Shown one piece after another: positions 33,808 through 47,240 of a stretch of DNA of 64,000 nt. Under the pieces are notes generated by a model. It searched no databases. It had not been told where the DNA came from and saw nothing but the letters and a program-made list of their open reading frames with translations. Location of the stretch: IMG/VR virus record IMGVR_UViG_3300008448_000001, positions 1 through 64,000 of that record; one strand, written 5' to 3'. The position numbers and the translations under genes were made by a program. Position 1 is the stretch's first letter; each line of letters opens with the position of its first letter.

Positions 33808-34875
33808 ATGACAAAAGTTGGCATCTACGTCGATTACAAGCACAACGATACAACGCTCGCTGCCGTCATGCTTGGGAACTGGTTTATTAGAAGCGGTAAT
33901 CCGGTTCGCTTCATCTCAAACGGGCCGGTGGCGAGAAACGTCGATGACTATTGGGACTCAAAAGTTCTGCGCGACTTTTCCGGGCAGGGTGGATGCTATT
34001 CTGGTCTGTCGCACGTCTTTTGGTTTTATCCGGACGAGCTGAGCTTGAAAGCGGCTAAGTTCGAGGCAAGCCAGAGCGACATGGTCGCGGATCCGCGTCA
34101 TTTTTACGTCCCAGGTTGGTGTGACGTGGCTCCACTTTCGGATGATTTTTTGCTTAACGCGGACAAGACAATTTCTCTAAGCCAAGACTCCGCGATTTGG
34201 TTAAGCTCAAAGTGTCGTGACTTCGAGGTAAACACGGCCTGGTCCAACTTGTGTGCAGCAGACAAATTGCTTGCGATGAAAAACGGGCGGGTGGAAAACG
34301 ACAAAATCAAAATTCTGGTACTGTTGGGCTCAGACTTCTCTACGACTATTGGCGAAGAGTTGTTTGAAGTCATTGCAAATTTGCTCCGGCTGTACCGAGG
34401 TTTACATGTTACTTTCGCGCTGGAGCGATCGCTGCCAAAGCCTCAACGGCGGCGGCTGGCCGGGTTAATTCAAGCGTTCGGATCTCGCGTGTGCCGTAGA
34501 GGTGTTGTGCCTTACAGTCGATATCACGAGATGGCATATTCGCACGACTGGGTTTATCTGGCTTGCTCTTCTTTTCGTCACGGTGCCTTAATTCCGCATT
34601 TAGAGGTAAGTGGAACTCCGCTCATTTGTCACGACGTTCCTCCAGCGAGATCGTACATAGCCGGAAAATTGTCAGGGTTACTCGTTCCTACAACGGTGAC
34701 GGACACTTTAAAACCGTCTGGAATTGTTTGTTTCGACTCGCTGATGGCGACGCTGGGGCATGCGGCGGAGCTCAACGAGCTAAGCCTAAAGGGCTTGCAG
34801 CGGAACGCATACGCTGGAAGGCGTAAGCGAATTCAGGATTTTGAGCGATTCCTTTTGAAAGAAGTGCTGGTTTAA
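33808..34875 (+). CDS. divergent GT-B (family 4-like) glycosyltransferase
   Basis: C-terminal GVVPY...MAYSHD...GALIPHLEVSGTPLICHDVP...GLLVP resembles the GT4 nucleotide-sugar-binding domain. Confidence 0.55.
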   Translation: MTKVGIYVDYKHNDTTLAAVMLGNWFIRSGNPVRFISNGPVARNVDDYWDSKVLRDFSGQGGCYSGLSHVFWFYPDELSLKAAKFEASQSDMVADPRHFYVPGWCDVAPLSDDFLLNADKTISLSQDSAIWLSSKCRDFEVNTAWSNLCAADKLLAMKNGRVENDKIKILVLLGSDFSTTIGEELFEVIANLLRLYRGLHVTFALERSLPKPQRRRLAGLIQAFGSRVCRRGVVPYSRYHEMAYSHDWVYLACSSFRHGALIPHLEVSGTPLICHDVPPARSYIAGKLSGLLVPTTVTDTLKPSGIVCFDSLMATLGHAAELNELSLKGLQRNAYAGRRKRIQDFERFLLKEVLV

Positions 34876-34972
34876 TTCTGCGGCATAAATGCTCAAGCAA
34901 ACGCACGGGTCGCTTGAAATCAGCGAAGACTGTGTTAGAACTATTTCTTCAACTTTTAAAACGGAGTCGAGG

Positions 34973-35536
34973 ATGGCGGACTACGCGTTCGAAAAAAACT
35001 ATTGGGGAAACTGCACGAATACTTTTGACGAAGAACAAAAGCATTTTGTGTACGCTCGCTGCATGGGAATACCGCTTGGGCATCATTCGTTTACCCCTGC
35101 GTGTGACAGGATACTGGACGTTGGCGGTGGCCCGGCCAGTATGCTGCTCAAAGTCGAAAAATTAAAAGAGGGTTTGGTCTGGGATCCTATCGCGTACCCT
35201 CAATGGACAGTGGACCGATACGCGGCGGCTAACATATCGGTTCGTACATTACCCGGTGAGTTGCTGAACGCAGCGGGCTGGGACGAAGTGTGGATGTACA
35301 ACTGTTTGCAACATACAAATAACCCGGAGAAGATTGTAAAAAATTGCCTCCGGGCGGGTAAAGTCTTTCGCATTTTTGAGTGGTTGGACATCCCCCCGCA
35401 CGACGGGCATCCGACGATGCTTACGGAAAGCCTGCTGAACGGTTGGCTTGCGACAAAGGGAACTGTGAAGTTCCTTGACGGCGTAAACGGTTGCTTGGGC
35501 AAGTCCTACTCTGCTGTTTTAACCGGTTTGACCTGA
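34973..35536 (+). CDS. class I SAM-dependent methyltransferase
   Basis: ILDVGGGP motif I, WDP, WDEVWMYNCLQH. Confidence 0.8.
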   Translation: MADYAFEKNYWGNCTNTFDEEQKHFVYARCMGIPLGHHSFTPACDRILDVGGGPASMLLKVEKLKEGLVWDPIAYPQWTVDRYAAANISVRTLPGELLNAAGWDEVWMYNCLQHTNNPEKIVKNCLRAGKVFRIFEWLDIPPHDGHPTMLTESLLNGWLATKGTVKFLDGVNGCLGKSYSAVLTGLT

Positions 35537-35546
35537 CTTCGAGTTT

Positions 35547-35891
35547 TTGTTCTTTACTACAGCGTTTGGAGGTACCCCCACCTTGGCGGAAAATTCTACG
35601 GGCTCATTTTTAACTTCTCCGGCTCCAGGGAAACAATCAAGCGATTTGTTGACAATGATTGCGCAGGAGTACGGCAAACCGCTCACAGGCGAAGTTGTTG
35701 CTTTTTTGGGTTTTGCACGCGGTTATTTGGAAAAGAATCGTCCAGCGGAAATCATTACGTTGCCTAACAACGTCGGTCTCAAGCTGACGAACTTCGTGGA
35801 AGTCCGAGTTTTCCCGGATCAGCCGGGAATGCAAGTCGGAGATGGGTCAATGGCAAGCAACGACCCTGGCATATCCATCAACAGGCAATGA
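35547..35891 (+). CDS. hypothetical protein
   Basis: ORF in operon; start uncertain. Confidence 0.5.
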   Translation: MFFTTAFGGTPTLAENSTGSFLTSPAPGKQSSDLLTMIAQEYGKPLTGEVVAFLGFARGYLEKNRPAEIITLPNNVGLKLTNFVEVRVFPDQPGMQVGDGSMASNDPGISINRQ

Positions 35892-36124
35892 TGTTGCAAC
35901 TTAATCCGCCTTTACCTCCGACGACACCAAGAGGTAAAGGCTTTGCTCATTTCTTAATTGACTACTCACAAGAACACGATCTTTTGTGGGTTGTGTTTTT
36001 GGATGATACCGGTGAAAGCTGGACGTTCAACAACCGAGAAATACGCTTGCAGTCGAACATTACTATGGGAAGGCCGAGCAATTCGACCAAGGAAGGTTAT
36101 GCCAAAGAACCCGATTCAGATTGA
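35888..36124 (+). CDS. conserved small phage protein (QLNPPLP...IDYSQEHDLLWVV type)
   Basis: recognisable phage motif; ATGA overlap. Confidence 0.7.
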   Translation: MMLQLNPPLPPTTPRGKGFAHFLIDYSQEHDLLWVVFLDDTGESWTFNNREIRLQSNITMGRPSNSTKEGYAKEPDSD

Positions 36125-36533
36125 AGAAAAAGTAGCCTTGATGCCCGCGACGAGGGTAAAACCTAAATACCCTTTCTGGCCGGTTACTTTCCGGTCGGTC
36201 ACGGCTCCGGAAGCGGTTAATGTTACCTTTGGAGACGCGGCAGACTCAGAAGAGTTTCAGATGAAGGCGTCCTTGGTTTTCTTAAGTGTGCAAGGTCTTT
36301 CTCTGCCCAACGCGTTCTGTCTTGAGTTCGACAAACCGGTGTCGATACTTAGAAAAGAAAGCGCCGCTTTTGACAACGCAATTACAAGCTTTTCAACGCT
36401 GGGAAACACGTCAAACTTGATCTTAGAGACCTCGAAGTTTTCCGTGGTATGCTACAGGCCGGTTTGCGTTTCTGCAGATCAAAGGTATGCGAATTTCTTT
36501 TTCAAGCAGGGGCCGGACGCGTGGACGGTTTGA
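36099..36533 (+). CDS. hypothetical protein
   Basis: ATG after GGAAGG. Confidence 0.55.
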   Translation: MPKNPIQIEEKVALMPATRVKPKYPFWPVTFRSVTAPEAVNVTFGDAADSEEFQMKASLVFLSVQGLSLPNAFCLEFDKPVSILRKESAAFDNAITSFSTLGNTSNLILETSKFSVVCYRPVCVSADQRYANFFFKQGPDAWTV

Positions 36534-36580
36534 CCGGGATTGATTCTTGATCGATTACAACTCGGAGATGACTTAATCGG

Positions 36581-36610
36581 GCGGCCTGCGTTCGCAGGCT
36601 GTCTTTTTTT
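36581..36610 (+). terminator. rho-independent terminator ending the core module
   Basis: GCGGCCTGCG-TT-CGCAGGCTGT hairpin followed by a T7 run. Confidence 0.8.
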
Positions 36611-36680
36611 GTTTGTAGCGACTGGCGATACGGGCACCTTTCGTCGGTCCTTGTTTTTCGGTGCCGGATAGGGAGCGGCA

Positions 36681-36959
36681 ATGGATGATTTTTCGCTTGA
36701 CCTAACGGGGTTAAATACCCCGAACTTGCTCGAGCTGAGCACAACGCACCTTAGTCTGCCGGTTGCAGAGTGGTGCAAAGGAAAGTGCTGCATGGAGAAT
36801 GAACACGGTTTCTTCTTTAACGTGCTGGACGCGGAAGGCACTGATTGTCATCCGCACGTCGCAACGATTTTGAAAGCAGCGCATAAGGCAGGCTTTCACT
36901 ATGTCTGGTTTGACTCTGACGCAGCGGTTTGTGCGTCTTTACCTGCTTATGATTGGTAG
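36681..36959 (+). CDS. DUF5983-like protein
   Basis: LELSTTHL ... GFF ... WFDSDA ... LPAYDW. Confidence 0.65.
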   Translation: MDDFSLDLTGLNTPNLLELSTTHLSLPVAEWCKGKCCMENEHGFFFNVLDAEGTDCHPHVATILKAAHKAGFHYVWFDSDAAVCASLPAYDW

Positions 36960-36971
36960 AAAGGTTTTACA

Positions 36972-37748
36972 ATGGCTAGTCTTATTTTAAATCACAGTAT
37001 TGACGTTTGGCTTAGTGACCCGGTTATCCGTCACTTTGTGACGGTGACAAGGGGAAATATCCGGTTTTCACCGCCGTTGGCGGATCAAGAAGCTGTAGAG
37101 GCGAACGAGTCGGCGATTGTGGTTTTGCTTCAAACGGAAGTTACAAGAGTTTTACGCGAAACCTTTGGACATTATTGGAGGCTCGGCGACGACGGAAGCG
37201 AGAGAGTTGTCTGGTCGAGTGCACCGGAAGAACAGGCGTATGTGTCCGGTTTGCTTTATACCGCATTTCCGGACGTTGATCGTTTTTGTACCGAGCTAGA
37301 TCTGTCGCAGATGGTTGGAAAACAACCGTTTAAACGCATTTCACTGCAGCCGATGTTCGATAAAGCTTGGAAAAGGTTTGTCGTTGAGAAGCGCAGACCT
37401 GGCTTTTCAGGTGGCATCTGCAGTTACCGGTCGATGCGAGAAAAAGGGGGGCACACTGAAGAATGCCGTTGTGCTGTGGGTTGGTCGTTGCCCAACATAC
37501 CTGCGATTCTTGAAAGACAAGTAGGCTTGCCGTCGCTGGTCGAAGCATACCCTTTTTTGTTTGAAAAAGACCTGGTGTACCTTGAACACAAGTCTAAGGT
37601 TTTGCACGACATACAGTATCGTTTGCACGACAAATGCGTTAGCAAGGCTGACGGAGAATGGTATTCGGACGTTGACCTGTCAAAGGTTTATCGTGAGTTT
37701 GCCGAGGAATTCGGATTGAAAGTGCCAGAGGCAGACGCATGTTCGTAA
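36972..37748 (+). CDS. hypothetical protein (C-terminal half paralogous to 38049-38456)
   Basis: LQxxFxKAW..F...C.Y...RCA.G.SLP...Q..LHD shared. Confidence 0.75.
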   Translation: MASLILNHSIDVWLSDPVIRHFVTVTRGNIRFSPPLADQEAVEANESAIVVLLQTEVTRVLRETFGHYWRLGDDGSERVVWSSAPEEQAYVSGLLYTAFPDVDRFCTELDLSQMVGKQPFKRISLQPMFDKAWKRFVVEKRRPGFSGGICSYRSMREKGGHTEECRCAVGWSLPNIPAILERQVGLPSLVEAYPFLFEKDLVYLEHKSKVLHDIQYRLHDKCVSKADGEWYSDVDLSKVYREFAEEFGLKVPEADACS

Positions 37749-37999
37749 CTATAGTTCTTTCGGATCTGGAAGGTATATCGCCCAGTCTACAGGGCGAGGG
37801 CTTTTCTTTCTCTGAGGCTAAGGAGTCTTTGCGAAAGCACGCAGCAGAGAGCAGAGCGTTTTTGCCTTGTGGTTGGGAGCAGGATGTTAATTCGACGTAC
37901 AGTAAGCTCTCCCCGACCTGTTTGCGAGTTGAGGACCAGTACGTCGGTTCAGAGATGACCATGGAGCCTTTTGTCGTGACTGTCGAAGTCGCGCTTTAG
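37739..37999 (+). CDS. hypothetical protein
   Basis: overlaps upstream stop. Confidence 0.55.
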   Translation: MFVTIVLSDLEGISPSLQGEGFSFSEAKESLRKHAAESRAFLPCGWEQDVNSTYSKLSPTCLRVEDQYVGSEMTMEPFVVTVEVAL

Positions 38000-38048
38000 C
38001 GGCTCAGCAGCAAAACAGGTTTGTAAGTTTTAAACGAAAAGGAGCATT

Positions 38049-38456
38049 TTGATGACAAAGTTGATTTCATTGCAGTCGATTTTCAACAAAGCGTGGCGGA
38101 ATTTTGTTATGGACGGGAAACCTCCGGCGTATGAAAACGGTCATTGCTACTACATTATGCCCGACGGTCGTCGTTGTGCCATAGGCCTTTCGCTTCCTCC
38201 GGACATCCTGGTGGATGTAGCGAAAGTGGAAATGTCGTTCTCCGAGGTGGTTGCGCGTTACCCGGATATTTTTGGGCCTTGCGTGCTGACATTGTCGGGA
38301 GATCAACAAGATATTTTTCAAGCCATGTTGCACGACGACTTGGTTTCTTTGTTTACCGACGGTTGGAAAAGTGGTGTTTCTCTTCGGAACGAGTACATCG
38401 GTACCGCAGAACGATTTGGCCTTAGCATACCCAGGAAAAAACATGAAAGATCTTGA
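38049..38456 (+). CDS. hypothetical protein (paralog of the 36972-37748 C-terminal domain)
   Basis: AAGGAG RBS; shared motifs. Confidence 0.75.
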   Translation: MMTKLISLQSIFNKAWRNFVMDGKPPAYENGHCYYIMPDGRRCAIGLSLPPDILVDVAKVEMSFSEVVARYPDIFGPCVLTLSGDQQDIFQAMLHDDLVSLFTDGWKSGVSLRNEYIGTAERFGLSIPRKKHERS

Positions 38457-38586
38457 GAAGTTGGACAGGGAGCTCGAGCAGCGGGATATTGCCAATTCGC
38501 CCTCTTGGCTTGACATTTCTGTTTTTTGCTTGAACCTTTTTACGTTCTGCGTGGTGTGTTTTATTCTTTACCGACTTTTATGGTGA
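38443..38586 (+). CDS. small membrane protein
   Basis: C-terminal hydrophobic helix. Confidence 0.5.
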   Translation: MKDLEKLDRELEQRDIANSPSWLDISVFCLNLFTFCVVCFILYRLLW

Positions 38587-38590
38587 CCGC

Positions 38591-38902
38591 ATGACAGTGA
38601 AAGCGTTGACGAGTACTATCGGCTCCAAGCTAGAGGAGCAGCAAAAACTTTTAAAACAGCTTGCTATGTGGGCTGACGTCAAATCGCAAGGCATTGACTG
38701 CGAAACGGTAAAAAGCTTTGGATTCAAAGAATCGTACGTCACTTCCGCAGAGCGGATTCTTCTCCGAAGGCAGCAACCAGGTTGGATGCTGTTTTCAAGC
38801 CTCTTACACCGTTATGGTGAAGAGCACTTTAACTACGTTCGATTGAAAGACGATCGAATCGTGGCTCTTAAAACCGCAATTAAAAGACCTGAACACAGGT
38901 AG
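38591..38902 (+). CDS. hypothetical protein
   Basis: 103 aa ORF. Confidence 0.6.
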   Translation: MTVKALTSTIGSKLEEQQKLLKQLAMWADVKSQGIDCETVKSFGFKESYVTSAERILLRRQQPGWMLFSSLLHRYGEEHFNYVRLKDDRIVALKTAIKRPEHR

Positions 38903-38915
38903 AAAGAAACTATTC

Positions 38916-39485
38916 ATGGGTTGGATTATCGAAAGTACGGGACTTGTTGTTGATGGTAACACGCTTAAGAGAATGGCTGCCGCAGGTACTATTGATCGGA
39001 ACACGATGATACGGTCGAAGTCTAAAAACCGATCGGTTCGTGCGGGCGATATCTCAAGCCTTGTCTGGCCAGACGAGGGCACGGATGTTTTCGCGGATTT
39101 TCCGCCAATACAAAGTCCCCCGTCGTACTTTAGTTCCGAGACGACTGCCTTCCAAGCGGATTCTTCTGCGTTCACCGAAGAAGCTGCGACACCGACGCAG
39201 CGTGCGACCGGGATTCTCGACTTGGCCTTCGAGGTTCCCATCACGCCGGTGCTCGCCTCGCTGATCTGGTTTTTGTGGCTGGTAGGCGGTTCGTTGGTTT
39301 GCGTGTTGGCCGTTGTCTTCCACCTGTTGAACCTGAAGAACAACCCGGAAGGTGCGGCGGCCAGGTCGATAGGAATGGCGGTCGCCAGCTACATCCTCAC
39401 GACGATTCTGCTTCGAGTCGTCTTGGAGTGTGTGGTCGTGTTTTTTAAGATTGCAGAACACCTGCGTTCGATTGCCAGAAAATAA
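38916..39485 (+). CDS. GYF_2-like plus DUF4282 membrane protein
   Basis: LKRMAAAGTIDRNTMI N-terminus; DLAFEVPITP...two TM helices...RVVLECVVVFFKIAEHLRSI. Confidence 0.75.
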   Translation: MGWIIESTGLVVDGNTLKRMAAAGTIDRNTMIRSKSKNRSVRAGDISSLVWPDEGTDVFADFPPIQSPPSYFSSETTAFQADSSAFTEEAATPTQRATGILDLAFEVPITPVLASLIWFLWLVGGSLVCVLAVVFHLLNLKNNPEGAAARSIGMAVASYILTTILLRVVLECVVVFFKIAEHLRSIARK

Positions 39486-39499
39486 CGAAAGGGCGACTT

Positions 39500-39817
39500 G
39501 TGACCAGCAGCATAAACAAAATTCTTGCTTTGCCGTGCAACAAAGGGTACTCCGTGTGGGGGGCCCAAATGGGGCGACGAGATCAGCAGCAGGGTTCGGC
39601 GGAACGGTTACACTTGCAGCGTGTGTCGATCTCGCAAGGTTACGACACGGGCGGGGCATACTGGGGCCTCGGTGAGCAGCTCTGGTGTGCTTTTTCTCCG
39701 GATAGCACAGAAAACACGGAGCCTGTTCGTGTTTTTGTGCGTGCCGGTTCAAGGGAAAAGGCAAAGGAACTGGTCCTGGAGCTTTTACCTGCCGGCGATT
39801 GGCGGTTTTTTAAATGA
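39500..39817 (+). CDS. conserved phage hypothetical protein
   Basis: GAQMGR ... GYDTGGAYWG ... FVRAGSRE motif. Confidence 0.7.
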   Translation: MTSSINKILALPCNKGYSVWGAQMGRRDQQQGSAERLHLQRVSISQGYDTGGAYWGLGEQLWCAFSPDSTENTEPVRVFVRAGSREKAKELVLELLPAGDWRFFK

Positions 39818-39860
39818 GCGAGTTGCAAGGTAAGCCGCCTGTCAAAACGAAGGAGGTGGA

Positions 39861-40136
39861 TTGGCCGTGGTTAAAAAATCGACGTTGATTCTTCGTTCGT
39901 TAGGCTTGTCTGACAATGATAGGCGGCTTCCGGTTCGAAAGATGGAAGACAGGTTATTCAAAGACGCAAGCGACCGTCTTTGGGTTTTGACGTATTTGGA
40001 AGGTGCTGTGCAGCTCCGGGAAAGTCTGTCCGGAGAGCAAAAAAAAGCAACGCATCTTTCCGACTTGGTTGTTTTCTACAGCGAGCACGAGTTCGATCTC
40101 TACTTGAAAAAGATAAGTGAAGACGAGCTCAGCTAG
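39861..40136 (+). CDS. hypothetical protein
   Basis: AGGAGG RBS. Confidence 0.6.
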   Translation: MAVVKKSTLILRSLGLSDNDRRLPVRKMEDRLFKDASDRLWVLTYLEGAVQLRESLSGEQKKATHLSDLVVFYSEHEFDLYLKKISEDELS

Positions 40137-40141
40137 AAAGG

Positions 40142-40525
40142 TTGATTGTGTCTCATCCTTATCACCACGCCTTGTCTTCAGTGAAGAAATGGGGCGTCTT
40201 GCCGGAAGACTATTTGGCGATACACAGTTGGTTTGACGAAAGTAAGTCCGCATACGCGGACATTCGCCACCGTGCCCTTCGGCATCATTCCGAGGGCATA
40301 TTTGAATGCGAGCAGGAGTTTGGCGTGACTCTCACTAATTCCAGCGGCAGGGTAGTTCCGGTTCGAGCTATTGGCGAACAACACGTCAACGAGGACTGCG
40401 GATTCATACCTTCCATGAAAGATTGGTTGCAGCATATAGCCTTGCAGCCTTGGATGTCGCGTGTTGGGGTTAAGCTTTCTGTGACTTTGCAATTAGAAGG
40501 GGAAAAAGAAAATGTCAGAGGTTAA
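40142..40525 (+). CDS. DUF6915-like protein
   Basis: HPYHHALSS.KKWG...IH.WFDESK...RHRALRHHSEGIF...IGEQHV.ED. Confidence 0.8.
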   Translation: MIVSHPYHHALSSVKKWGVLPEDYLAIHSWFDESKSAYADIRHRALRHHSEGIFECEQEFGVTLTNSSGRVVPVRAIGEQHVNEDCGFIPSMKDWLQHIALQPWMSRVGVKLSVTLQLEGEKENVRG

Positions 40526-40883
40526 ACCGTTAGACAAAGATATTTACAATCGCGCAAAAGCTGCCGGGATAACGTCAATCCTTTTGATGTTTGAAGGCGG
40601 CAGCGACGAGGGTTTTTTGCAGGTAGACGCCGAGTACGCCGATGCCGAAAAACCGGACAATTCTGCGGTGGAAAACGGGCGCCACGAGTCGTTTTTAGAC
40701 GATCTTTACGAGTGGGCGGAAGAGGCCTATGCCTTTGATGGCAATGGAGACGGTAGTGGTCCGTACGGTTTTGACGTCACGTACAACCTGGAAAACGGCT
40801 TAGTTTCCATGGAAACATGGGAGACAGGTGAAGTTTACGACGCTGCGATTGTCTCGGATCTTGCGATTAACGAAGAGGATTAA
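40512..40883 (+). CDS. DUF6878-like acidic protein
   Basis: GI..I...FEGGSDEG motif; adjacent to the DUF6915-like gene. Confidence 0.6.
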   Translation: MSEVKPLDKDIYNRAKAAGITSILLMFEGGSDEGFLQVDAEYADAEKPDNSAVENGRHESFLDDLYEWAEEAYAFDGNGDGSGPYGFDVTYNLENGLVSMETWETGEVYDAAIVSDLAINEED

Positions 40884-41117
40884 ATGGCCAGAAAAGCAAA
40901 AACGATCGTGCATGTCAACCAGCACAAGATTCGCGCTAACCTGAAGAAGTGTGTCAACGAACCGGTTATAACCGTCAAGCATCGCGGCACCAATGTTTAT
41001 GCGCACGAGGTGCGAGTTGATGGGCCGTGCGTGCTCAAGTATTCTCCGGACAATCCGCTCAGTTGCGGGGCTCGTGTGTGGATCGAAACCACTGCTACCG
41101 TAACTGTCGTACGCTAG
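40884..41117 (+). CDS. conserved phage hypothetical protein
   Basis: HVNQHKIRAN...PVITVK...PLSCGARVWIET. Confidence 0.8.
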   Translation: MARKAKTIVHVNQHKIRANLKKCVNEPVITVKHRGTNVYAHEVRVDGPCVLKYSPDNPLSCGARVWIETTATVTVVR

Positions 41118-41171
41118 CGGACAGGCTGTTTCACTTTCCAAACAATTTTTCACGTGAAGGGTTAACATAGA

Positions 41172-41447
41172 ATGCTTAACGAAATACAGTCCAAACTGGC
41201 CGAACTGCGGACGGAGGCAAAGCGGCTTTCTAGGGCACAGAACATCCTTTACAACTGTCACTGCTACGACATTTCGGCGAATACGCAGAGCGGGGACGTT
41301 AGCCTGAGTTTCGTCTTTAAGGACAAAAATATTCAGGCGAAAATCCAAGAGGTCCTGAATGCGCAAATTGATGAAATCTTGGACCGTATCAACTCGATCG
41401 AGTCACGTCTCAACACTGCTCTTGCTGGCTTCAAGGTGGACGAATGA
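41172..41447 (+). CDS. hypothetical coiled-coil protein
   Basis: ORF in + strand run. Confidence 0.6.
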   Translation: MLNEIQSKLAELRTEAKRLSRAQNILYNCHCYDISANTQSGDVSLSFVFKDKNIQAKIQEVLNAQIDEILDRINSIESRLNTALAGFKVDE

Positions 41448-41656
41448 CCGAAACGATTGAAGTCAAGGTAAAGGTCACGTTGCTGAAAAAGGTTGACGGC
41501 GAGTCCGACGTGGTGCGTGAAGTGGTACAGGCGGTAATAGACGGCGTCAATCATCCGGAGATAAAAGAGGTTGAGCTTGTTGATTTCTGCGCGGGAGATT
41601 TCAAGTCCCCGTTCAAGCCGCAAAAGACGCCGTCTGCGTCGTTTGAACTATTTTAA
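41444..41656 (+). CDS. hypothetical protein
   Basis: ATGA overlap. Confidence 0.6.
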   Translation: MTETIEVKVKVTLLKKVDGESDVVREVVQAVIDGVNHPEIKEVELVDFCAGDFKSPFKPQKTPSASFELF

Positions 41657-41673
41657 CTTTGAAAGGAAAACAA

Positions 41674-42246
41674 ATGGCCACTCGAGCTACTTATTGCTTT
41701 GAGCCCTCCTCGAACAGCCCCAGACGACGGAAACATTTTGTTTACAGCCACCACGACGGTTATCCGGAGGGTGCGGCTGTTTACTTTTACGATGCGCTGC
41801 AGCACGACGGCAAAGGCAACTTTGCCACAGTTTTCATTAAGGCAAACCACCATGCGGAGTTGACGGACAGCCACGAACACCATAGCGATACCGAGTACCG
41901 GTACGATATTACGGGCGAAGGCCCGGAGGCAAAGATTGTAGCCCGGCGACTTTTGGATTCAAAAGTGGTTTTCTGTGGTTCGTTGCATGAATTTATCAAC
42001 TGTAATTCAAGGGATATCCCAGGCTTTACGCCTTTCAAAGAGATAAAACGTCCCCTTTATCCGCCGCAATTCGTGACGGAGGCCATGGCGAAAAAGTTAC
42101 TTTCGGTGCCGGTTTCCTACTTGTTTTGCACGGCAAAAACCGGCAGGCGGTCAGCCAATTGGCAAGATTGCCTCGCAGATGTCAATGCAATTTTGAAGGT
42201 CTTCCCGGAGCTGACGCCGAATAATTTTTCGGAGTTGACTGCATGA
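41674..42246 (+). CDS. conserved phage protein (MxTR...YxHxDGYP family)
   Basis: MATRA ... YSHHDGYPEG ... HSDTEYRY. Confidence 0.75.
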   Translation: MATRATYCFEPSSNSPRRRKHFVYSHHDGYPEGAAVYFYDALQHDGKGNFATVFIKANHHAELTDSHEHHSDTEYRYDITGEGPEAKIVARRLLDSKVVFCGSLHEFINCNSRDIPGFTPFKEIKRPLYPPQFVTEAMAKKLLSVPVSYLFCTAKTGRRSANWQDCLADVNAILKVFPELTPNNFSELTA

Positions 42247-42488
42247 CAGCAAAAGATTTAACGACGACGTACGAATTCATTGATTGGATAGGCGAAAAGA
42301 ACGTGGTAACAATGAAAGGCGAAATCATATTGTCGTGCCCGGAACACCACATCTACATCGCACAGCTAGCCAGGCGGGCGTTTCGTGTCCATTACGGGCT
42401 CCAGCATTCGTTCCACGGTACGCTTGAAAACGCAACCGTAGAATTTGGCAATTGCTTTCTGCAAGCAAATGCTGCAATCACTGATTAA
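42243..42488 (+). CDS. hypothetical protein
   Basis: ATGA overlap. Confidence 0.6.
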   Translation: MTAKDLTTTYEFIDWIGEKNVVTMKGEIILSCPEHHIYIAQLARRAFRVHYGLQHSFHGTLENATVEFGNCFLQANAAITD

Positions 42489-42550
42489 CTCGCATATCGC
42501 CTCACGTGGGCGGTCTCTTTCAAACAACAGTAGTACAAGGGTATTTCAAC

Positions 42551-43303
42551 GTGGCTGATAAATATTCTGGAACGATTCGCATTGGCGGTAGCGTCACCGA
42601 GGAGGAACTTGAAAAAATTCAAGGTTTGTTTGAACAGTGCTTAGATTTCTTGTCGGATGGTGAGTTGCGTGAGAACGGAACGGGTGATTTTGTCGAATGC
42701 GAAGAAAACGCCTTCAAGAAAGTAATTGCTTTTTGCAACCGACAAAATATCGCGCTGTCTTTAGTCTGGCACAAAAAGCGAGGGGCAGACAGCGTCGTGG
42801 AGTACTGGTTAGCCGGTAGCCACAAGGAGTATCTTGCTAACTGCGACGGCGATGTTGTGGTCAAGCTTTCCGATCTGGAATCGCACACTGATACTTCGGT
42901 TGCAGATTTCATCGAAGAGCTTGAGGTTCCTGTTTTCCCGCCGTTCGAACTTGTCAAAACCGACAAAAGCGAGCCGCAAGGCTTCGATACTGCGCATCTT
43001 AGTGGTGACGCACTTGTGGCGGCTAAGGCGGTGTTGAAGGCTCTTGGGCCCAATCCGTGCGGCAGCGGAGTTAGAGCTTTTTGGACGCCGGACGAATGGA
43101 TTGCTCGCAACGAGAAATTTGGCACGGACTCCATTCTTATTTTGTGCCACGACGGAGGCGACCTCGCCGTAATGTGTAATTGGGACTACGGTCAGTACGA
43201 ACTTTTTCAAAAGCTTGAGAAAAGGCTCAAAAAACACGGATACTACTGCGTGCAGCAAACTAGCTGGTACTCCGCGGTGTACCGTATACCGACAAGCAGC
43301 TAA
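42551..43303 (+). CDS. hypothetical two-domain protein
   Basis: long ORF; start GTG 42551 uncertain. Confidence 0.65.
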   Translation: MADKYSGTIRIGGSVTEEELEKIQGLFEQCLDFLSDGELRENGTGDFVECEENAFKKVIAFCNRQNIALSLVWHKKRGADSVVEYWLAGSHKEYLANCDGDVVVKLSDLESHTDTSVADFIEELEVPVFPPFELVKTDKSEPQGFDTAHLSGDALVAAKAVLKALGPNPCGSGVRAFWTPDEWIARNEKFGTDSILILCHDGGDLAVMCNWDYGQYELFQKLEKRLKKHGYYCVQQTSWYSAVYRIPTSS

Positions 43304-43313
43304 CACGGTTTTG

Positions 43314-43363
43314 GGGCTTGAACACGAGGGCACCGGTTCGCCGGTGCCCGACTGTTCGAGTCT
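43314..43363 (+). other. 50-nt intergenic stem-loop (9-bp upper stem, UUCG loop, 3x3 internal loop, 11-bp lower stem)
   Basis: GGGCACCGG-TTCG-CCGGTGCCC flanked by GGGCTTGAACA / TGTTCGAGTCT. Confidence 0.75.
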
Positions 43364-43411
43364 GATTGGCAGAACTTGATGTTTTCTTTAGCGTAACAGG
43401 AGATTTGCAGC

Positions 43412-43642
43412 ATGTCGGAAGACGTGAACGAGAAATTGAAAAGACTGTTGGCGGCGGTGGACGTGCTTTTGCTGAACGCTGTGGATTTAGACGAGTGTTT
43501 TGTTGACGACGACAACGACGACGAGGACGACGACTACCCGGAAGACGAAGACGGGATACGTTGGTATCACGACTGGTTCGAGCTTAAAGAAGCTCGGGAT
43601 CAGTTTAAAGACAACACTGGAGTTCAAACACAAAGGGGTTAA
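43412..43642 (+). CDS. acidic hypothetical protein
   Basis: AGGAG RBS. Confidence 0.6.
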   Translation: MSEDVNEKLKRLLAAVDVLLLNAVDLDECFVDDDNDDEDDDYPEDEDGIRWYHDWFELKEARDQFKDNTGVQTQRG

Positions 43643-43643
43643 A

Positions 43644-43712
43644 ATGTGCGCTTGCGCTCAACCAAACATTAACGGGCATTATGGCTATCGTTGGCAACCT
43701 AAAGACGAGTAA
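43644..43712 (+). pseudogene. probable truncated gene (22 aa) ending inside the cassette repeat
   Basis: AAAGGGG then ATG; MCACAQPNINGHYGYRWQPKDE, stop TAA supplied by the repeat. Confidence 0.4.
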
Positions 43713-43754
43713 CTGATACCAACAAATGAGGAGTAAAATATTCCCTTTTCATTC

Positions 43755-44105
43755 ATGGAGAAAATTATGATTCGAGCAGAAGCGTGGAGCGATTGTCAAC
43801 AATTTAGGATCGAATTCGATGCAACTTTGTGGGCAGAGCAAGCCAGTGACAAAGCCTTAATTGATTTAGGCCAATGTGAATGTCGTGGGGATTATCCTGC
43901 CGATGATGTCGTTATGTTCATGGCTGATCACGATGAAAAGGCCGCAAGTCTATTTGAATTTATTCAGATAGTACAAACTCAACCATACAACGGCGACACT
44001 AACGGCTTTGAATGTGCAGTTGATGAAGATGATCTTCGTAAATGGCTGCAAGAGCATAAACCTCATCTTGTGGAACAAGTGTTTTCCGGGCTGTATTACG
44101 AGTAA
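43755..44105 (+). CDS. hypothetical protein (cassette 1)
   Basis: 116 aa; stop codon inside repeat 2. Confidence 0.7.
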   Translation: MEKIMIRAEAWSDCQQFRIEFDATLWAEQASDKALIDLGQCECRGDYPADDVVMFMADHDEKAASLFEFIQIVQTQPYNGDTNGFECAVDEDDLRKWLQEHKPHLVEQVFSGLYYE

Positions 44106-44145
44106 CTGATACCAACAATAAGGGCATCACTCGTTGGAGATTTTT

Positions 44146-44439
44146 ATGAAATATGAACAAGTTTTGTTGGTTGATGGTGTTGTCGCTGTCGAAATGGAAA
44201 GAATCGTTCAGAATCCTGATTCAAGCGTCAAGGGCGACAGCGTTGAATTTGATGAAGAAGTTGTATTTGAAAATGGGACTCGTATGGCAATTCAGGTTTG
44301 TGCCGGCGGAAATCCCACCGCAGAACCTTGTTGGACGCAAGGTGTTTTGTTTGCACCTAATGGAACTGAATTAGGATGTACTGATGTAGGTGAGTCGTTT
44401 CTCGGCGAATATCATATTGCTGATGGCGATGATGAATAA
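44146..44439 (+). CDS. hypothetical protein (cassette 2a)
   Basis: GGAG RBS. Confidence 0.7.
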   Translation: MKYEQVLLVDGVVAVEMERIVQNPDSSVKGDSVEFDEEVVFENGTRMAIQVCAGGNPTAEPCWTQGVLFAPNGTELGCTDVGESFLGEYHIADGDDE

Positions 44440-44463
44440 CATCCCCCTTTTTTATGGAGTTCT

Positions 44464-44793
44464 ATGCTGAAACCGTATGTAATTCAAAATCAAAACGGCA
44501 CTGAGTGTTGGTCAAATCATGATGGGTGGGTTGACATAACATCAGCCACCCGATTCAGTGAACAAGAAAGACTCACAGTAAATCTTCCAATGTATGGCAG
44601 ATGGACTACACTGTGGGAAGTCAACAGTATTCAATTTGCTCGATTCATTGCGGAGTGTGAGGCTTGTGGAGTTTTCACCGACGAAGCTCGTCTTGAGGAA
44701 GTAGCTGAATCAATGGATCTGGACATTGATGAGGTTTTTGAACTTGTCAGTCGGGCACAAGAAAGTTGGGACGATTACAAAGCAAGTATCTGA
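44464..44793 (+). CDS. hypothetical protein (cassette 2b)
   Basis: GGAG RBS; stop TGA inside repeat 3. Confidence 0.7.
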   Translation: MLKPYVIQNQNGTECWSNHDGWVDITSATRFSEQERLTVNLPMYGRWTTLWEVNSIQFARFIAECEACGVFTDEARLEEVAESMDLDIDEVFELVSRAQESWDDYKASI

Positions 44794-44957
44794 TACCAAC
44801 AAGTGAAGCATCACTTTTCGAATCTTGCTTTGTGCCGTTCAGGCATTGTGGATTGTGTGGGCGGCGGCGCCGTCATTGAAAGATGGACAGCTTACAGTAT
44901 CCCTGAACTCAAAGAACTATTTAAGCTAGCTAAAAAGCAGCAAGAAAGGTGTCAAGC

Positions 44958-45503
44958 ATGAAACAAGTACCTGTGGCAAAAAGAATGCGTAAAGCGCTTC
45001 AAGCCCTTTACGGGAAACGCGAAGACCTTGATACGATGGTCACGGACGCATTGGCGGACTTACGGCACCTGTGCGACGTACACTCTATTGACTTCTACAA
45101 TTGCGATCGGATCGCGTACTCTCATTACGTGGTGGAATTGAAAGACAAGGAGCGACTAAAGCAAAAAAATGCGGTGGAGTCGCATGAGCTTTCGTCCGCA
45201 GAGGCAAAACATAAATTGCACGAAAAAATCGAAGAACGATTGTCGTTTCATAGCGAGGCGAGCGGCGAGAACCCGGACGTGCTTTCCGCTTCTTGTTTGT
45301 ACGTCAGCCCGATAAGGGCAGACCTGCACATCTTCACAGTAGAGGAGTTTCGCGAGTCATGCAAAAACAAGTCTCTTATTGACGCGGACGGTTGGGGGCA
45401 CCCTGCCAAAGCCAACAAACAAGACCGGTCGATCCGGATCGTTCCATCGAAATTAGATCGAATTCCGAGCGATGCTACGCATATTGTCTGGTACAACCGC
45501 TAG
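44958..45503 (+). CDS. hypothetical two-module protein
   Basis: DALADLRHLCD motif; C-terminal FTVEEF...DGWG...THIVWYNR motif. Confidence 0.7.
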   Translation: MKQVPVAKRMRKALQALYGKREDLDTMVTDALADLRHLCDVHSIDFYNCDRIAYSHYVVELKDKERLKQKNAVESHELSSAEAKHKLHEKIEERLSFHSEASGENPDVLSASCLYVSPIRADLHIFTVEEFRESCKNKSLIDADGWGHPAKANKQDRSIRIVPSKLDRIPSDATHIVWYNR

Positions 45504-45572
45504 CTTCGGTACCGTGCCGAACGTTGCAAGATTTTGAGTACGATCATTAGCTTTTTTTAAGGATATTTTGAC

Positions 45573-46130
45573 ATGACAACCTGGCCAAAAATTTGTTTAT
45601 ACGCTGCCGTTGAACACTGGCTCGCTTCGCCGACCGTAGGACGGCTCATCGAGCAAGCCCTGCAAAATGCGGGGGCGACCCCCTTGGAAATCCAGGAGAT
45701 TTCCGGGGACGACTTCGCCGATTGCGTTGAGAATTTCCAGTGCGATGTTTATTCGCATTTGAACGACTACGGCGGGGATGTCGAGTTCGTGCGTCATCCG
45801 CAAACACACGGAATCGGGGTCATCTACTACTACCCCATACCAGCGGACAAGCAGTTCGATCCCCAAATCGTCGTTAAGGCCGTTGACGAAGCACTGGAAT
45901 CGTCGCAACTCGCCGCCCTGCCTTTCTTCACGCAGCACGCTAAGCGGTTGCTGGCGGGGCTGCGAGAAGCCAAAGCCGCCAAGGTCGCTGACATCACTGA
46001 AACTAGCCTACGTTTGCTTCGAGAGGCCGTTCAACTGCTCCTAGACCTCAAAGCAGACCCAAGCGTCCGATTTCAGGGCCCGCACATCCTAAAGATCAGT
46101 GACTTCTTGGCGAAGGTCGTCAAGTCGTAA
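45573..46130 (+). CDS. hypothetical protein
   Basis: 185 aa; AAGGA upstream. Confidence 0.65.
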   Translation: MTTWPKICLYAAVEHWLASPTVGRLIEQALQNAGATPLEIQEISGDDFADCVENFQCDVYSHLNDYGGDVEFVRHPQTHGIGVIYYYPIPADKQFDPQIVVKAVDEALESSQLAALPFFTQHAKRLLAGLREAKAAKVADITETSLRLLREAVQLLLDLKADPSVRFQGPHILKISDFLAKVVKS

Positions 46131-46212
46131 CGTCGTAACGTACAACCACTAGCCGATGGAGACGGATCAGGCTTGGGATAAGTCAACATCAAAACCAAAC
46201 AAGAGGAATTAT

Positions 46213-46641: not shown

Positions 46642-46770
46642 CACCCGCAAAATCGTTGATTTATTGGTCAAGGTGGTCAAGAAATAACGCGCAACCAGAT
46701 CTGACCCGTTGCCATCGGCAACTGGTCTCGCTTGGGTTTTCGGTTTAAGTTTTTTTTGGAGGTTTTGAAT

Positions 46771-47082
46771 ATGGCGGCTAACAGCAACGACGATTGTGGG
46801 GACGAAAATGAAGTGTGCATCGACTGCGGAAGCGAACACATTGAAGAGGGCACATGCGTAGATTGCCAGACCAAGGACTTTGCGGAAACACACGACGAGA
46901 CCCACGAAGAGGCCCGAAGGTTTGCGTTTGCGACTGATTCGGAGTTGGGATTCATTGAGGCGGCCACGTTCGAGGCGGCTTGCGCAGTCCTTAAGACCCT
47001 TCTTCCGGATGCCGCCGTAAACAACGGAGGCTGGGGTTGGGTTCGCAACGAGGACGGCGAACTGTTTGAGATTAACTGTTAG
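46771..47082 (+). CDS. hypothetical protein with CxxC...CxxC Zn ribbon
   Basis: GGAGG RBS; CIDC, CVDC. Confidence 0.65.
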   Translation: MAANSNDDCGDENEVCIDCGSEHIEEGTCVDCQTKDFAETHDETHEEARRFAFATDSELGFIEAATFEAACAVLKTLLPDAAVNNGGWGWVRNEDGELFEINC

Positions 47083-47097
47083 GCTTCACCGTCTTTC

Positions 47098-47120
47098 GCC
47101 GGATAGGCTCTGGTTTTTTT
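47098..47120 (+). terminator. short hairpin plus T-run
   Basis: GCCGGA-TAGGC-TCTGGT then TTTTTT. Confidence 0.45.
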
Positions 47121-47240
47121 GTGTAGGTTTTTCGGTTTCAGTTTTTACTTTGGAGGTTTGATTGTGGCGGCCATTTTGCGTGGCTTAGCTGCTTCAAACA
47201 GCTTTTTATTTGTGACTGATTTTTAAAGAAGGTGCATAAC

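What the first reader, a model, noticed from the sequence alone, without database searches (positions are those of the whole stretch)
43644..44820. Repeat-bounded gene cassettes (integron-like) that appear to have truncated a resident gene
Seen: ACGAGTAACTGATACCAACAA occurs exactly at 43705 and 44098, with a near copy ending at 44802. Copies 2 and 3 continue N5-GCATCACT. Each copy supplies the stop codon of the upstream ORF. The enclosed 393-bp and 684-bp units carry one and two small genes, look more AT-rich than the flanks, and share a second motif AT(T/C)CCC.TTT...ATGGAG (about 43740 and 44442). The first copy cuts an ORF after only 22 codons. Inference: site-specific, stackable insertion of gene cassettes; no recombinase is visible in this window.
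Basis: partly seen in the sequence, partly recalled or inferred. Interest (0 to 1): 0.65.

Follow-up and report, generated by a model that had tools for sequence, protein, structure and literature searches.

The report
Foreign gene block with donor-phage repeats
A large phage replaced 602 bp of its own DNA with a 1.1-kb three-gene block from an unrelated phage lineage, and the three repeats are that donor's standard between-gene signal carried along as passengers, not sites of an integron-like insertion machine.

Summary
The 21-mer occurs exactly twice, with a third near copy, the units are AT-rich, and the first copy ends a resident ORF after 22 codons.

Two relatives of this phage (L145, 91-97% identical; L010, ~87%) have the empty site with an intact 153-codon gene. 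Comparison with L145 shows that window 43707-44818 (1,112 bp) replaced 602 bp spanning two resident genes. The joints have 0-4 nt of microhomology, and the empty site has no copy of the motif.

The insert is 95-99.5% identical to segments of a different phage lineage. In that lineage, TAR-N-TGATACCAACAA starts about 80% of the intergenic spacers in a unidirectional array of small genes at least 47 kb long (95 copies, all on one strand). The motif is phased on the stop codon and often followed by a hairpin, a T-run and GGAG.

Donor arrays differ by gene-sized indels whose breakpoints cluster in these spacers, as with PeSL cassettes of T4-type phages. Only one of the insert's four joints lies within a motif copy. 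No integrase domain was found in the 50 ORFs tested.

Verdict: horizontal acquisition by illegitimate recombination. The motif is a donor regulatory and shuffling element. An integron-like mechanism is not supported.

The parts
43644..43712 (+). Remnant of a resident 153-codon gene. It has 21 resident codons, then one donor codon (GAG) and the donor stop TAA.
   Evidence: Intact homologues lie at L010 11133-11594 and at L145 about 7835-8333. The family has 107 clusters, mostly full length at about 150-160 aa. Homology to L145 ends at window 43706.
43705..43706 (.). Left joint. The dinucleotide AC is shared by the resident sequence (..AAAGAC) and the donor sequence (..TTAC|GAGTAAC).
   Evidence: Alignment of the window, L145, L010 and donor spacers; blastn end points.
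43707..44818 (+). Donor-derived insert of 1,112 bp, which replaces 602 bp of resident DNA (L145 7899-8500).
   Evidence: One search gives the flank homology. One search gives three segments that match donor locus L013 at 99.5%, 97.7% and 94.8%. GC is 42.3%, like the donors (40-43%) and unlike the backbone (about 50%).
43714..43725 (+). Motif copy 1 (core TGATACCAACAA). It is a hybrid copy: its 5' flank GAGTAAC is like the copy downstream of gene A, and its 3' flank ATGAGGAGTAAAAT.. is like the copy upstream of gene A in donors.
   Evidence: In the close donors L013 and L021 the copy upstream of A is preceded by CAACAAG (in the more distant L018 by CAGCAAG), and in L013 and L021 it lies inside the 3' end of a 191-aa gene.
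43767..44105 (+). Gene A (112 aa), function unknown.
   Evidence: There are 26 homologous clusters. Window 43711-44135 is 99.5% identical to L013 8699-9123. The AF2 model has pLDDT 93 and no significant PDB match.
44107..44118 (+). Motif copy 2, followed by the donor spacer TAAGGGCATCACTCGTT.
   Evidence: Identical to the spacer downstream of gene A in L013 and L142.
44135..44136 (.). A|B joint (..CATCACTCGTT|GGAGATTTTTATG). Relative to every sampled close donor it removes a 126-aa gene.
   Evidence: L013 9123 joins to 9554. The order A-126-B is seen in L013, L021, L022, L023 and L142.
44146..44439 (+). Gene B (97 aa). It is truncated at the C-terminus by 8 codons relative to its 105-aa homologues.
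   Evidence: There are 46 homologous clusters. The near-invariant C-terminal Y and V are missing. The AF2 model has pLDDT 95 and no significant fold match.
44423..44463 (+). B|C joint and the remaining half of a donor spacer. Microhomology TGAATA, then the 3' half of the hairpin (ACATCCCCC), a T-run, and the ATGGAG ribosome-binding site. There is no motif copy here.
   Evidence: The B and C homologies to L013 overlap over 44423-44438. The donor spacer reads ..CAACAATGGGGATGTGAATAACATCCCCCTTTTTTATGGAGTTCTATG.
44464..44793 (+). Gene C (109 aa), function unknown. Its stop TGA is the first triplet of motif copy 3.
   Evidence: There are 17 homologous clusters. It is 94.8% identical to L013 5958-6342.
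44791..44802 (+). Motif copy 3, followed by 16 nt of donor-type spacer (GTGAAGCATCACTTTT).
   Evidence: A similar spacer occurs at L013 7078-7115.
44818..44819 (.). Right joint, from donor spacer into the interior of a resident 82-aa gene (0-4 nt of microhomology).
   Evidence: Homology to L145 resumes at window 44819 = L145 8501; alignment.
44819..44961 (+). The 3' remnant of a resident gene, intact as an 82-aa gene in L145 (8395-8643) and as a 104-aa ORF in L010 (14300-14614). Its frame stays open from a GTG at 44803 inside the donor spacer.

Best explanation
**What happened in the window (shown).** The window comes from a ~205-kb phage genome. An ancestor had the arrangement seen today in its relative L145: a 153-aa gene, then an 82-aa gene, then a 184-aa gene. 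One illegitimate recombination event, using 0-4 nt of microhomology, deleted 602 bp spanning the first two genes. It put in their place 1,112 bp from an unrelated, more AT-rich phage lineage, the 'donor' (contigs L013, L019, L021, L142). The three repeats came in with that DNA.

**What the repeat is in the donor lineage (shown).** The extended motif TAR-N-TGATACCAACAA opens about 80% of the intergenic spacers of a unidirectional array of small ORFan genes at least 47 kb long. It is always on the coding strand. In 78% of copies it overlaps the stop codon or lies 4 nt after it, so it carries stops in two reading frames. It lies mostly 31-57 nt before the next start codon. About half the copies are followed at once by a GC hairpin and a T-run, then GGAG.

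**What the element does (inferred).** It is a composite transcription-unit boundary: a binding box for a phage or host transcription factor (promoter-like), plus a terminator or attenuator, plus a ribosome-binding site. Because it repeats at every gene boundary, it also gives portable homology. General homologous recombination can use that homology to delete, duplicate and swap single genes without breaking them. This is how PeSL cassettes work in T4-type phages.

**Role in this window (inferred).** The copies are passengers. Copy 1 still records one crossover inside the motif in the donor's history. The other internal joints are ordinary deletions.
For: **Empty site and breakpoints.**
- L145 1-7898 matches window 34797-43706, and L145 from 8501 matches the window from 44819, at 85-97% identity. 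The interval between is unrelated (alignments).
- L010 also has the intact gene.
- L145 has no motif copy and no similarity to donor arrays.

**Donor origin.**
- Window 43711-44135 is 99.5% identical to L013, 44136-44438 is 97.7% identical, and 44423-44808 is 94.8% identical.
- The insert's GC matches the donors.
- Otherwise the donor contig shares with the window only a 190/195-aa gene and a DUF6915 gene, and only at the protein level.

**Motif statistics.**
- There are 27 copies on the coding strand and 0 on the other in L013, and 46 and 0 in L019.
- There are 95 copies between 41 and 88 kb of the 98-kb donor contig. They stop where gene orientation flips.
- 66 of 81 gene junctions carry the motif.
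- The offset to the stop codon is 0 nt in 30 copies and +4 nt in 27, out of 73.
- 34 of 73 copies are followed by a strong hairpin.
- Terminator-like sites number 28, against 10.2 +/- 3.3 expected.

**Shuffling in the donor lineage.**
- The order is C...A-126-B in L013, L021 and L142, and A-79-B in L018. L019 lacks a separate A gene; A-like sequence is fused into a 145-aa ORF there.
- 27% of synteny breakpoints lie within 10 nt of a motif, against 8% at random, and 63% lie within 60 nt, against 28%.
- One indel between the 96%-identical arrays L013 and L021 ends within about 5 nt of a motif's 5' edge.

**A second, independent uptake.** L010 12904-13560 is 96.3% identical to the donor-type contig L018 and sits at another position.

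**PeSL properties** are taken from PMC2839356 and PMC4122927.
Against: - The motif's function is inferred only. It does not fit the E. coli sigma-70 consensus: promoter-like sites number 20, against 23.7 expected.
- Phasing on the stop codon could instead point to a role at the RNA or translation level, or to a repressor site.
- Twelve invariant nucleotides are short for homologous recombination. Many donor breakpoints lie elsewhere in the spacer or at gene ends, so selection for intact genes may explain the clustering without the motif being the crossover point.
- The order A-B-C was found in no donor. C lies upstream of A in all of them. One-block arrival therefore needs an unsampled donor arrangement, or a circular or tandem intermediate.
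- The three segments are unequally related to L013 (2/425 against 20/386 mismatches, p = 3e-5).
- The rest of the window's own contig (64-205 kb) could be checked only for exact 17-mers and for one two-copy spacing.
Confidence: 0.8

Rival explanations
1. Stepwise, PeSL-like stacking inside this genome. One donor cassette entered first by illegitimate recombination and brought a motif copy. Further cassettes, as mini-circles or from co-infecting donor phage, were then added by motif-by-motif homologous recombination. Small deletions later blurred two of the joints.
For: - Copy 1 is a hybrid. Its 5' flank is like the copy downstream of gene A and its 3' flank like the copy upstream of A. That is the junction expected from a circularised or tandemly duplicated A unit. 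The distance from copy 1 to copy 2 is exactly one unit, 393 bp.
- The three segments differ significantly in their identity to L013.
- The order A-B-C is absent from all sampled donors.
- PeSL mini-circles are documented in T4-type phages (PMC2839356).
Against: - The A|B and B|C joints are not at motif copies, and B lost conserved C-terminal residues.
- GAGTAAC also precedes the motif after other donor genes (7 instances across 4 donor loci, L013, L019, L021 and L142), so the hybrid copy could have formed within the donor lineage.
- No relative with an intermediate state was found.
Confidence: 0.12
2. One reading: integron-like, site-specific cassette capture. The 21-mer is a recombination site (attC-like) recognised by a dedicated recombinase encoded elsewhere.
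For: - Direct, same-orientation repeats bound gene-sized units, and each supplies a stop codon.
- In the donor lineage the motif is invariant and marks module boundaries.
- Only 64 kb of the 205-kb genome was examined for recombinases.
Against: - The empty site lacks any motif or repeat, and the outer joints lie in coding DNA with a 602-bp deletion.
- Two internal joints are imprecise.
- The motif is not an imperfect palindrome like attC.
- No Phage_integrase, Resolvase or Recombinase domain was found in the 50 window ORFs tested or among the precomputed Pfam hits listed for the called genes of the ~50 kb of donor contig.
- A recombination site would not be expected at about 80% of gene junctions across 47 kb, phased to stop codons and at a fixed distance from the ribosome-binding site.
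Confidence: 0.04
3. The history is the same, but the motif has a different function in the donor. It is not promoter-like. It is either an asymmetric operator for a phage repressor that blocks elongation ('stoperator'-like), or an RNA-level signal for processing or for termination and reinitiation, tied to the stop codon.
For: - The motif is a 12-nt asymmetric site with strictly one orientation relative to transcription. It lies in short intergenic spaces and is present in dozens of copies, as described for mycobacteriophage stoperators (PMC9283540, abstract).
- It is phased much more tightly to the stop codon (57 of 73) than to the start codon.
- There is no sigma-70-type enrichment.
Against: - Where a terminator hairpin directly follows the stop codon, the motif comes after the T-run and keeps its usual distance to the next start (L013 2940-3036, 4384-4514, 11431-11946). 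That fits the beginning of a unit better than the end of one.
- A weak extended -10-like signal follows at fixed spacing: TG at +18/19 in 53% of copies and A at +22 in 59%.
- No repressor or lysogeny genes were seen.
Confidence: 0.2

Closest known systems
PeSL (promoter-early stem-loop) cassettes of T4-type phages (Arbiol et al. 2010, PMC2839356; Comeau et al. 2014, PMC4122927)
   Same: - Both are composite intergenic elements that begin at the upstream stop codon. Both contain a stem-loop, often GGGG...CCCC, that behaves as a terminator, and both end with a Shine-Dalgarno sequence and the start codon.
- Both are densely repeated in hyperplastic regions full of ORFans.
- In both, insertions, deletions and replacements of single ORFans have breakpoints in these elements.
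- A hybrid element (copy 1) looks like a mini-circle or tandem junction.
   Different: - PeSLs are defined by an E. coli sigma-70 consensus promoter. Here the conserved part is an invariant 12-mer that does not fit that consensus.
- The 12-mer is phased on the stop codon and carries stops in two frames.
- The element occupies about 80% of junctions over at least 47 kb, far denser and more uniform than PeSLs.
- The phage lineage and its host are unknown.
- Promoter and terminator activity and mini-circles are not demonstrated here.
- The insertion into the window did not use the element at all.
Moron or ORFan acquisition by illegitimate recombination (mosaic phage genome evolution)
   Same: A foreign segment of different base composition is joined at sites without homology. 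It destroys resident accessory genes and brings its own expression signals.
   Different: Here the donor lineage can be identified at 95-99.5% identity. The imported signals are a highly repeated, lineage-specific motif.
Integron gene cassettes (attC / attI / IntI)
   Same: Gene-sized units bounded by same-orientation repeats. The units are mostly promoterless small ORFs of unknown function, in one orientation.
   Different: There is no integrase and no attI-like site at the empty locus. The repeats are 12-nt and non-palindromic, unlike the imperfect inverted-repeat attC sites. The joints are imprecise. The motif sits at a fixed phase to translation signals.
Mycobacteriophage stoperators (L5/Bxb1-type repressor sites; PMC9283540)
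   Same: Asymmetric sites of about 12-13 bp, in many copies, in one orientation relative to transcription, in short intergenic regions.
   Different: Stoperators belong to temperate phages with a known repressor. There is no evidence here for either. Stoperators are not linked to hairpins or to gene shuffling.

Membership tests
Integron / attC gene cassettes | A tyrosine recombinase (IntI) encoded next to the array | tested here: not met
   No Phage_integrase, Resolvase or Recombinase domain in 50 window ORFs or in the Pfam hits listed for called genes in ~50 kb of donor contig. The remaining 141 kb of the window's contig were not seen.
Integron / attC gene cassettes | A primary attachment site (attI) at the insertion point, with precise junctions at a fixed nucleotide | tested here: not met
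   The empty site in L145 and L010 is coding DNA with no motif. 602 bp were deleted, and the joints have 0-4 nt of microhomology.
Integron / attC gene cassettes | Cassette-associated sites that are imperfect palindromes able to fold as single strands (attC) | tested here: not met
   The conserved core TGATACCAACAA is asymmetric. Hairpins follow only 34 of 73 copies and resemble terminators: a GC stem followed by a T-run.
PeSL regulatory cassettes (T4-type phages) | [quoted passage not shown] | tested here: met
   Donor arrays: 66 of 81 junctions carry the element. 57 of 73 copies are phased to the stop. Terminator-like sites number 28, against 10.2 +/- 3.3 expected. GGAG precedes the start.
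PeSL regulatory cassettes (T4-type phages) | A sigma-70 consensus early promoter within the element | tested here: not met
   Sigma-70-type matches number 20, against 23.7 +/- 5.0 expected in L013. There is only a weak TG(+18/19)...A(+22) signal. The host and its promoter consensus are unknown, so a non-E. coli promoter cannot be excluded.
PeSL regulatory cassettes (T4-type phages) | Indels and replacements of ORFans between related genomes, with crossovers inside the elements | tested here: met
   Breakpoints are enriched near the motif (27% against 8% within 10 nt). A 35-nt island of homology is centred on a motif between unrelated genes (L013 1936-1970). One indel between L013 and L021 ends within about 5 nt of a motif's 5' edge. 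Copy 1 in the window is a hybrid.
PeSL regulatory cassettes (T4-type phages) | Promoter and terminator activity, and excised mini-circles, shown experimentally | not testable with these tools
   This needs reporter assays, transcript mapping and inverse PCR. The phages are uncultured.
PeSL regulatory cassettes (T4-type phages) | Membership of the T4-type (Tevenvirinae-like) phages | tested here: inconclusive
   The window has UvsX-like, SbcCD-like and PolA-type replication genes. The donor contig has one T4_Y16D-family ORF. No capsid or terminase comparison was made.
Stoperator-type repressor sites | A cognate immunity repressor and a temperate lifestyle | not tested
   No repressor or integrase was noticed in the ~50 kb of donor contig examined. 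The complete donor genome was not available.

The most novel reading that the evidence does not exclude
In the donor lineage the invariant, stop-codon-phased 12-mer may be more than a regulatory box. It may be the recognition site of a dedicated phage-encoded factor (a recombinase, nuclease or annealing protein) that makes single ORFan genes excise, circularise and re-insert. That would amount to a phage analogue of an integron, operating on an array of at least 47 kb and about 95 cassettes and exporting cassettes to unrelated phages. The hybrid copy 1 and the two independent uptakes, in this genome and in L010, would be traces of that traffic.
Probability: 0.1. Interest if true: 0.8.

Novelty: new variant of a known kind. 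Interest (0 to 1): 0.42.

Why it matters
**For this window.** The result is a clean, base-pair-resolved example of how a large phage gains and loses accessory genes. Donor, recipient and empty site are all identified. Two accessory genes were destroyed, three were imported, and one of the three was damaged on arrival.

**More broadly.** The donor lineage shows an extreme form of 'punctuated' ORFan arrays. One invariant 12-mer with built-in stop codons opens almost every spacer across tens of kilobases. This extends the PeSL idea, in which regulatory cassettes double as recombination linkers, beyond T4-type coliphages. It also gives a concrete sequence handle for three tasks:
- finding such arrays in metagenomes;
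- mapping gene flow between unrelated phages;
- testing experimentally whether shuffling is a by-product of general recombination or is catalysed.

Tried and rejected
**Searches that found no relatives or donors.**
- GenBank phages, distant blastn of 42500-46200: no match.
- The 17-mer in IMG/VR: only the window's own contig has 3 copies. Seven other contigs have single copies with no flank similarity, about the number expected by chance.
- Two motif copies 364-394 nt apart in IMG/VR: only the window's contig. Donor-type arrays are therefore not in that collection, and no second array was detected in the rest of this genome by this partial test.
- Metagenome scan for relatives of the 265-aa flank gene: none.
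- Metagenome scan for the exact A|B joint: none. Both nulls are weak, because that collection does not return even the source contig.
- Genome collection scan for the two-copy pattern: five loci, all unrelated to the donors. Three are CRISPR arrays of Bacteroidota MAGs whose repeat ends in TGATACCAAC. One looks like a tandem repeat within a coding region. One is two copies in a repeated stretch in Crenothrix.

**Function searches for the genes.**
- Pfam and PHROGs gave nothing usable for genes A, B and C, the 153-aa gene, the 82/104-aa gene, or the donor neighbours.
- AF2 models of A and B are confident but have no significant PDB match. B has a weak PUR-repeat-like hit at E = 0.44, which I did not rely on.

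**RNA families and literature.**
- Rfam: no family in the region or in the donor arrays.
- Literature search for the 12-mer: one unrelated paper.

**Ideas I dropped.**
- That the diverged motif copy after gene A in L010 shows decay in a recipient genome. The donor-type contig L018 has the same variant.
- That the 13 nt TGGCAACCTAAAG left of copy 1 were donor DNA. They are resident sequence.
Full report
**1. The observation**

The 21-mer ACGAGTAACTGATACCAACAA is exact at 43705 and 44098. A copy with three mismatches lies at 44782. None is expected by chance. With one mismatch allowed, the 12-nt core TGATACCAACAA occurs only at these three places in the 64-kb window, all on the + strand.

Each copy supplies or abuts the stop codon of the ORF before it. 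GC is 42.3% across 43705-44815, against about 50% on both sides.

The window is the first 64 kb of a 204,794-bp IMG/VR contig. It is a large phage with all genes on one strand. Its replication and recombination module includes SbcC/SbcD-like, helicase, DnaB-like, PolA+UDG and UvsX-like genes.

**2. Empty-site relatives and exact breakpoints**

Two relatives of the backbone were found:
- L010 (IMG/VR 3300016476_001599, ~87% identical) is collinear with the window up to 43691. Where the window's ORF stops after 22 codons, L010 carries an intact 153-codon gene beginning MCACDQPNING.
- L145 (JGI 3300045409, 19.6-kb contig, 91-97% identical) was reached through a search with that protein. The search also showed that the protein belongs to a family of 107 clusters, mostly about 150-160 aa.

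L145 1-7898 matches window 34797-43706, and L145 from 8501 matches the window from 44819. In L145 the interval between holds the rest of the 153-aa gene, a 61-nt spacer, and the first ~35 codons of an 82-aa gene. That 82-aa gene is homologous to a 104-aa ORF that sits elsewhere in L010.

The window thus lost 602 bp and gained 1,112 bp (43707-44818):
- The left joint is ..CCTAAAGAC|GAGTAACTGATACC.., with a 2-nt overlap (AC).
- The right joint is ..GCATCACTTTT|CGAATCTTGC.., with 0-4 nt of overlap.
- The 3' part of the 82-aa gene survives at 44819-44961.

L145 contains no copy of the motif, even with two mismatches, and no similarity to the donor arrays. No attachment site existed before the event. 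It was an illegitimate replacement inside coding DNA.

**3. Where the insert came from**

Genes A, B and C have 26, 46 and 17 homologous clusters, all unnamed. Their genomic contexts are long, unidirectional arrays of small genes, seen in L013, L019, L018, L021-23 and L142.

The insert is a mosaic of three segments of an L013-like genome:
- 43711-44135 matches L013 8699-9123 at 99.5%.
- 44136-44438 matches L013 9554-9856 at 97.7%.
- 44423-44808 matches L013 5958-6342 at 94.8%.

Donor GC is 40-43%. Beyond A, B and C, the 98-kb donor contig shares with the window only a 190/195-aa gene and a DUF6915 gene, at protein level. Donor and recipient are different phages that draw on a common pool of accessory genes.

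The sister genome L010 independently carries another donor-type block (gene A plus a 79-aa gene). That block is 96.3% identical to L018 and sits at a different position.

**4. What the repeat is in its home lineage**

*Copy number and orientation.*
- L013 has 27 copies in 12.3 kb and L019 has 46 in 20.3 kb. All are on the coding strand.
- Along the 98-kb donor contig there are 95 copies between 41 and 88 kb. None lies beyond the point where gene orientation flips.
- 66 of 81 gene junctions have a copy.

*Position relative to genes.*
- In 30 of 73 copies the TGA of the core is the stop codon. In 27 a TAA or TAG lies 4 nt upstream.
- The extended motif TAR-N-TGATACCAACAA therefore carries stops in two frames.
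- The distance from the end of the motif to the next start codon is mostly 31-57 nt.

*The rest of the spacer.*
- 34 of 73 copies are followed immediately by a strong hairpin, for example GGGGGATGTGAATAACATCCCCC or GGTAGGTGTGAGG..CCTCACACCTACC, then a T-run and (A)TGGAG.
- Terminator-like sites are enriched, 28 against 10.2 +/- 3.3 expected. E. coli-type sigma-70 promoters are not, 20 against 23.7.
- Spacers without a hairpin share further blocks: GT at +19/20, and ..TCAC...
- Where a terminator directly follows the stop codon, the motif comes after the T-run and keeps its distance to the next start.

No Rfam family matches. The one paper that contains the 12-mer's reverse complement is unrelated.

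**5. Shuffling in the donor lineage**

Gene order differs gene by gene between arrays:
- L013, L021 and L142 have C-127-89-52-62-95-67-191-A-126-B-190.
- L018 has A-79-B.
- L019 has A-like sequence fused into a 145-aa ORF, and other replacements.

Synteny breakpoints cluster near the motif. 27% lie within 10 nt, against 8% at random. 63% lie within 60 nt, against 28%.

Specific examples:
- A 35-nt island of homology is centred on a motif between unrelated genes (L013 1936-1970).
- A 781-bp indel between the 96%-identical arrays L013 and L021 has its right end within about 5 nt of a motif's 5' edge.
- Other breakpoints lie at the ribosome-binding site or at gene ends.

**6. The four joints in the window**

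1. *Copy 1.* Homology to L013 begins at the core. The 5' flank GAGTAAC is like the copy downstream of A. The 3' flank ATGAGGAGTAAAAT is the end of a donor 191-aa gene that normally precedes A. This is a crossover inside the motif. It is the junction expected from a circular or tandem A unit, and the distance from copy 1 to copy 2 is one unit, 393 bp. However, GAGTAAC also precedes the motif after other donor genes.
2. *A|B.* The joint lies 17 nt after copy 2 and shows no homology. It deletes the 126-aa gene present in all close donors.
3. *B|C.* The joint is a 6-nt microhomology (TGAATA) between B's 3' end and a hairpin loop. It removes B's last 8 codons, including near-invariant residues, B's motif copy, and half the hairpin.
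4. *Right end.* The joint lies 16 nt after copy 3.

Precise site-specific recombination is therefore not what built this locus.

**7. Interpretation**

*Shown:*
- The segment is foreign and its donor lineage is identified.
- The replacement was illegitimate.
- The repeats are the donor's intergenic element.
- Gene-level variation in the donor lineage is concentrated at these elements.

*Inferred:* The element is a transcription-unit boundary, made of a regulator or promoter box, a terminator or attenuator, and a ribosome-binding site. It also serves as portable homology for modular shuffling.

The closest known system is the PeSL cassette of T4-type phages. PeSLs begin at the upstream stop codon, contain a promoter and a GGGG...CCCC stem-loop, and end at the SD and ATG. 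They mediate ORFan indels and form mini-circles (PMC2839356; PMC4122927).

The differences from PeSLs are:
- The promoter criterion (sigma-70 consensus) is not met here.
- The conserved box is an invariant 12-mer phased on the stop codon.
- The density and uniformity are much higher.

A stoperator-like or RNA-level function of the box remains possible.

Integron membership fails on three defining features: the integrase, the attI site, and the attC structure. No integrase or resolvase domain was found in 50 window ORFs.

**8. Verdict**

The finding is real and now largely explained. It is a horizontally acquired three-gene block that carries its donor's intergenic punctuation motif.

It is not an integron-like system. 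It is a new variant of PeSL-type modular shuffling, seen from the recipient side. The window locus itself is of modest interest. The donor lineage's motif-punctuated array of at least 47 kb is the more notable object.

Noticed in passing
window 46743-46778 and 47136-47171 (flanking the ORF at 46772-47082); also window 46688-46746, L010 12850-12915 and 14256-14314: The backbone phage has its own repeated intergenic element, with a TGA stop, a stem GTTGYC/GRCARC with a compensatory change, then GGTCTCGCTTGG, a T-run and GGAG. Direct repeats of ~36-40 nt of it flank a 116-aa ORF. L145 lacks exactly that interval (window 46779-47135). This is a PeSL-like indel that does not involve the donor motif.
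   Followed up: partly
window 41462-42242: A 70-aa ORF and the 195-aa gene (41659-42246) are present in the window and L010 but absent from L145. The 195-aa gene has a ~67% nt homologue in donor arrays directly after gene B. This suggests an older exchange with the same gene pool.
   Followed up: partly
L151, L152, L153 (Chitinophagaceae and Fermentimonas MAG contigs): These are CRISPR arrays with a period of ~76-77 nt. Their repeat (GTTGTGA.TTGCTTTC...) ends in TGATACCAAC(AAC), the same 10-13 nt as the phage motif. It is probably a coincidence favoured by the design of the two-copy search. No similarity extends beyond the motif.
   Followed up: partly
L148, L147, L019 and L146 (ENA ERZ28614433 scaffold_51, contig positions ~41,000-88,000): A unidirectional array of well over 100 small ORFan genes carries 95 motif copies. 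The copies end where gene orientation flips. The array includes a T4_Y16D-family ORF and several DUF families.
   Followed up: partly
L010 12190-13257: In the relative, the homologue of the window's 185-aa gene reads through without a stop into the imported gene A, giving a 355-aa ORF. This is either a real fusion or a frameshift or assembly error at the junction element.
   Followed up: no
window 54737-56800 and 649-2565: Two large genes contain internal tandem and dispersed repeats. One has 18-nt units encoding (A/E)EAKKAE-like repeats and ~430-500-bp domain repeats. The other has ~300-bp repeats. Both are unrelated to the finding.
   Followed up: no
L143/L144 (NCBI GCA_052139955.1, Thermoguttaceae MAG; ENA 272-kb contig): A distant homologue of gene B (49% identical) lies in a GC-rich (62%) contig with phage-like replication genes (DNA ligase, AAA, helicase). 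It offers only a weak hint to a planctomycete-associated large phage or prophage.
   Followed up: no
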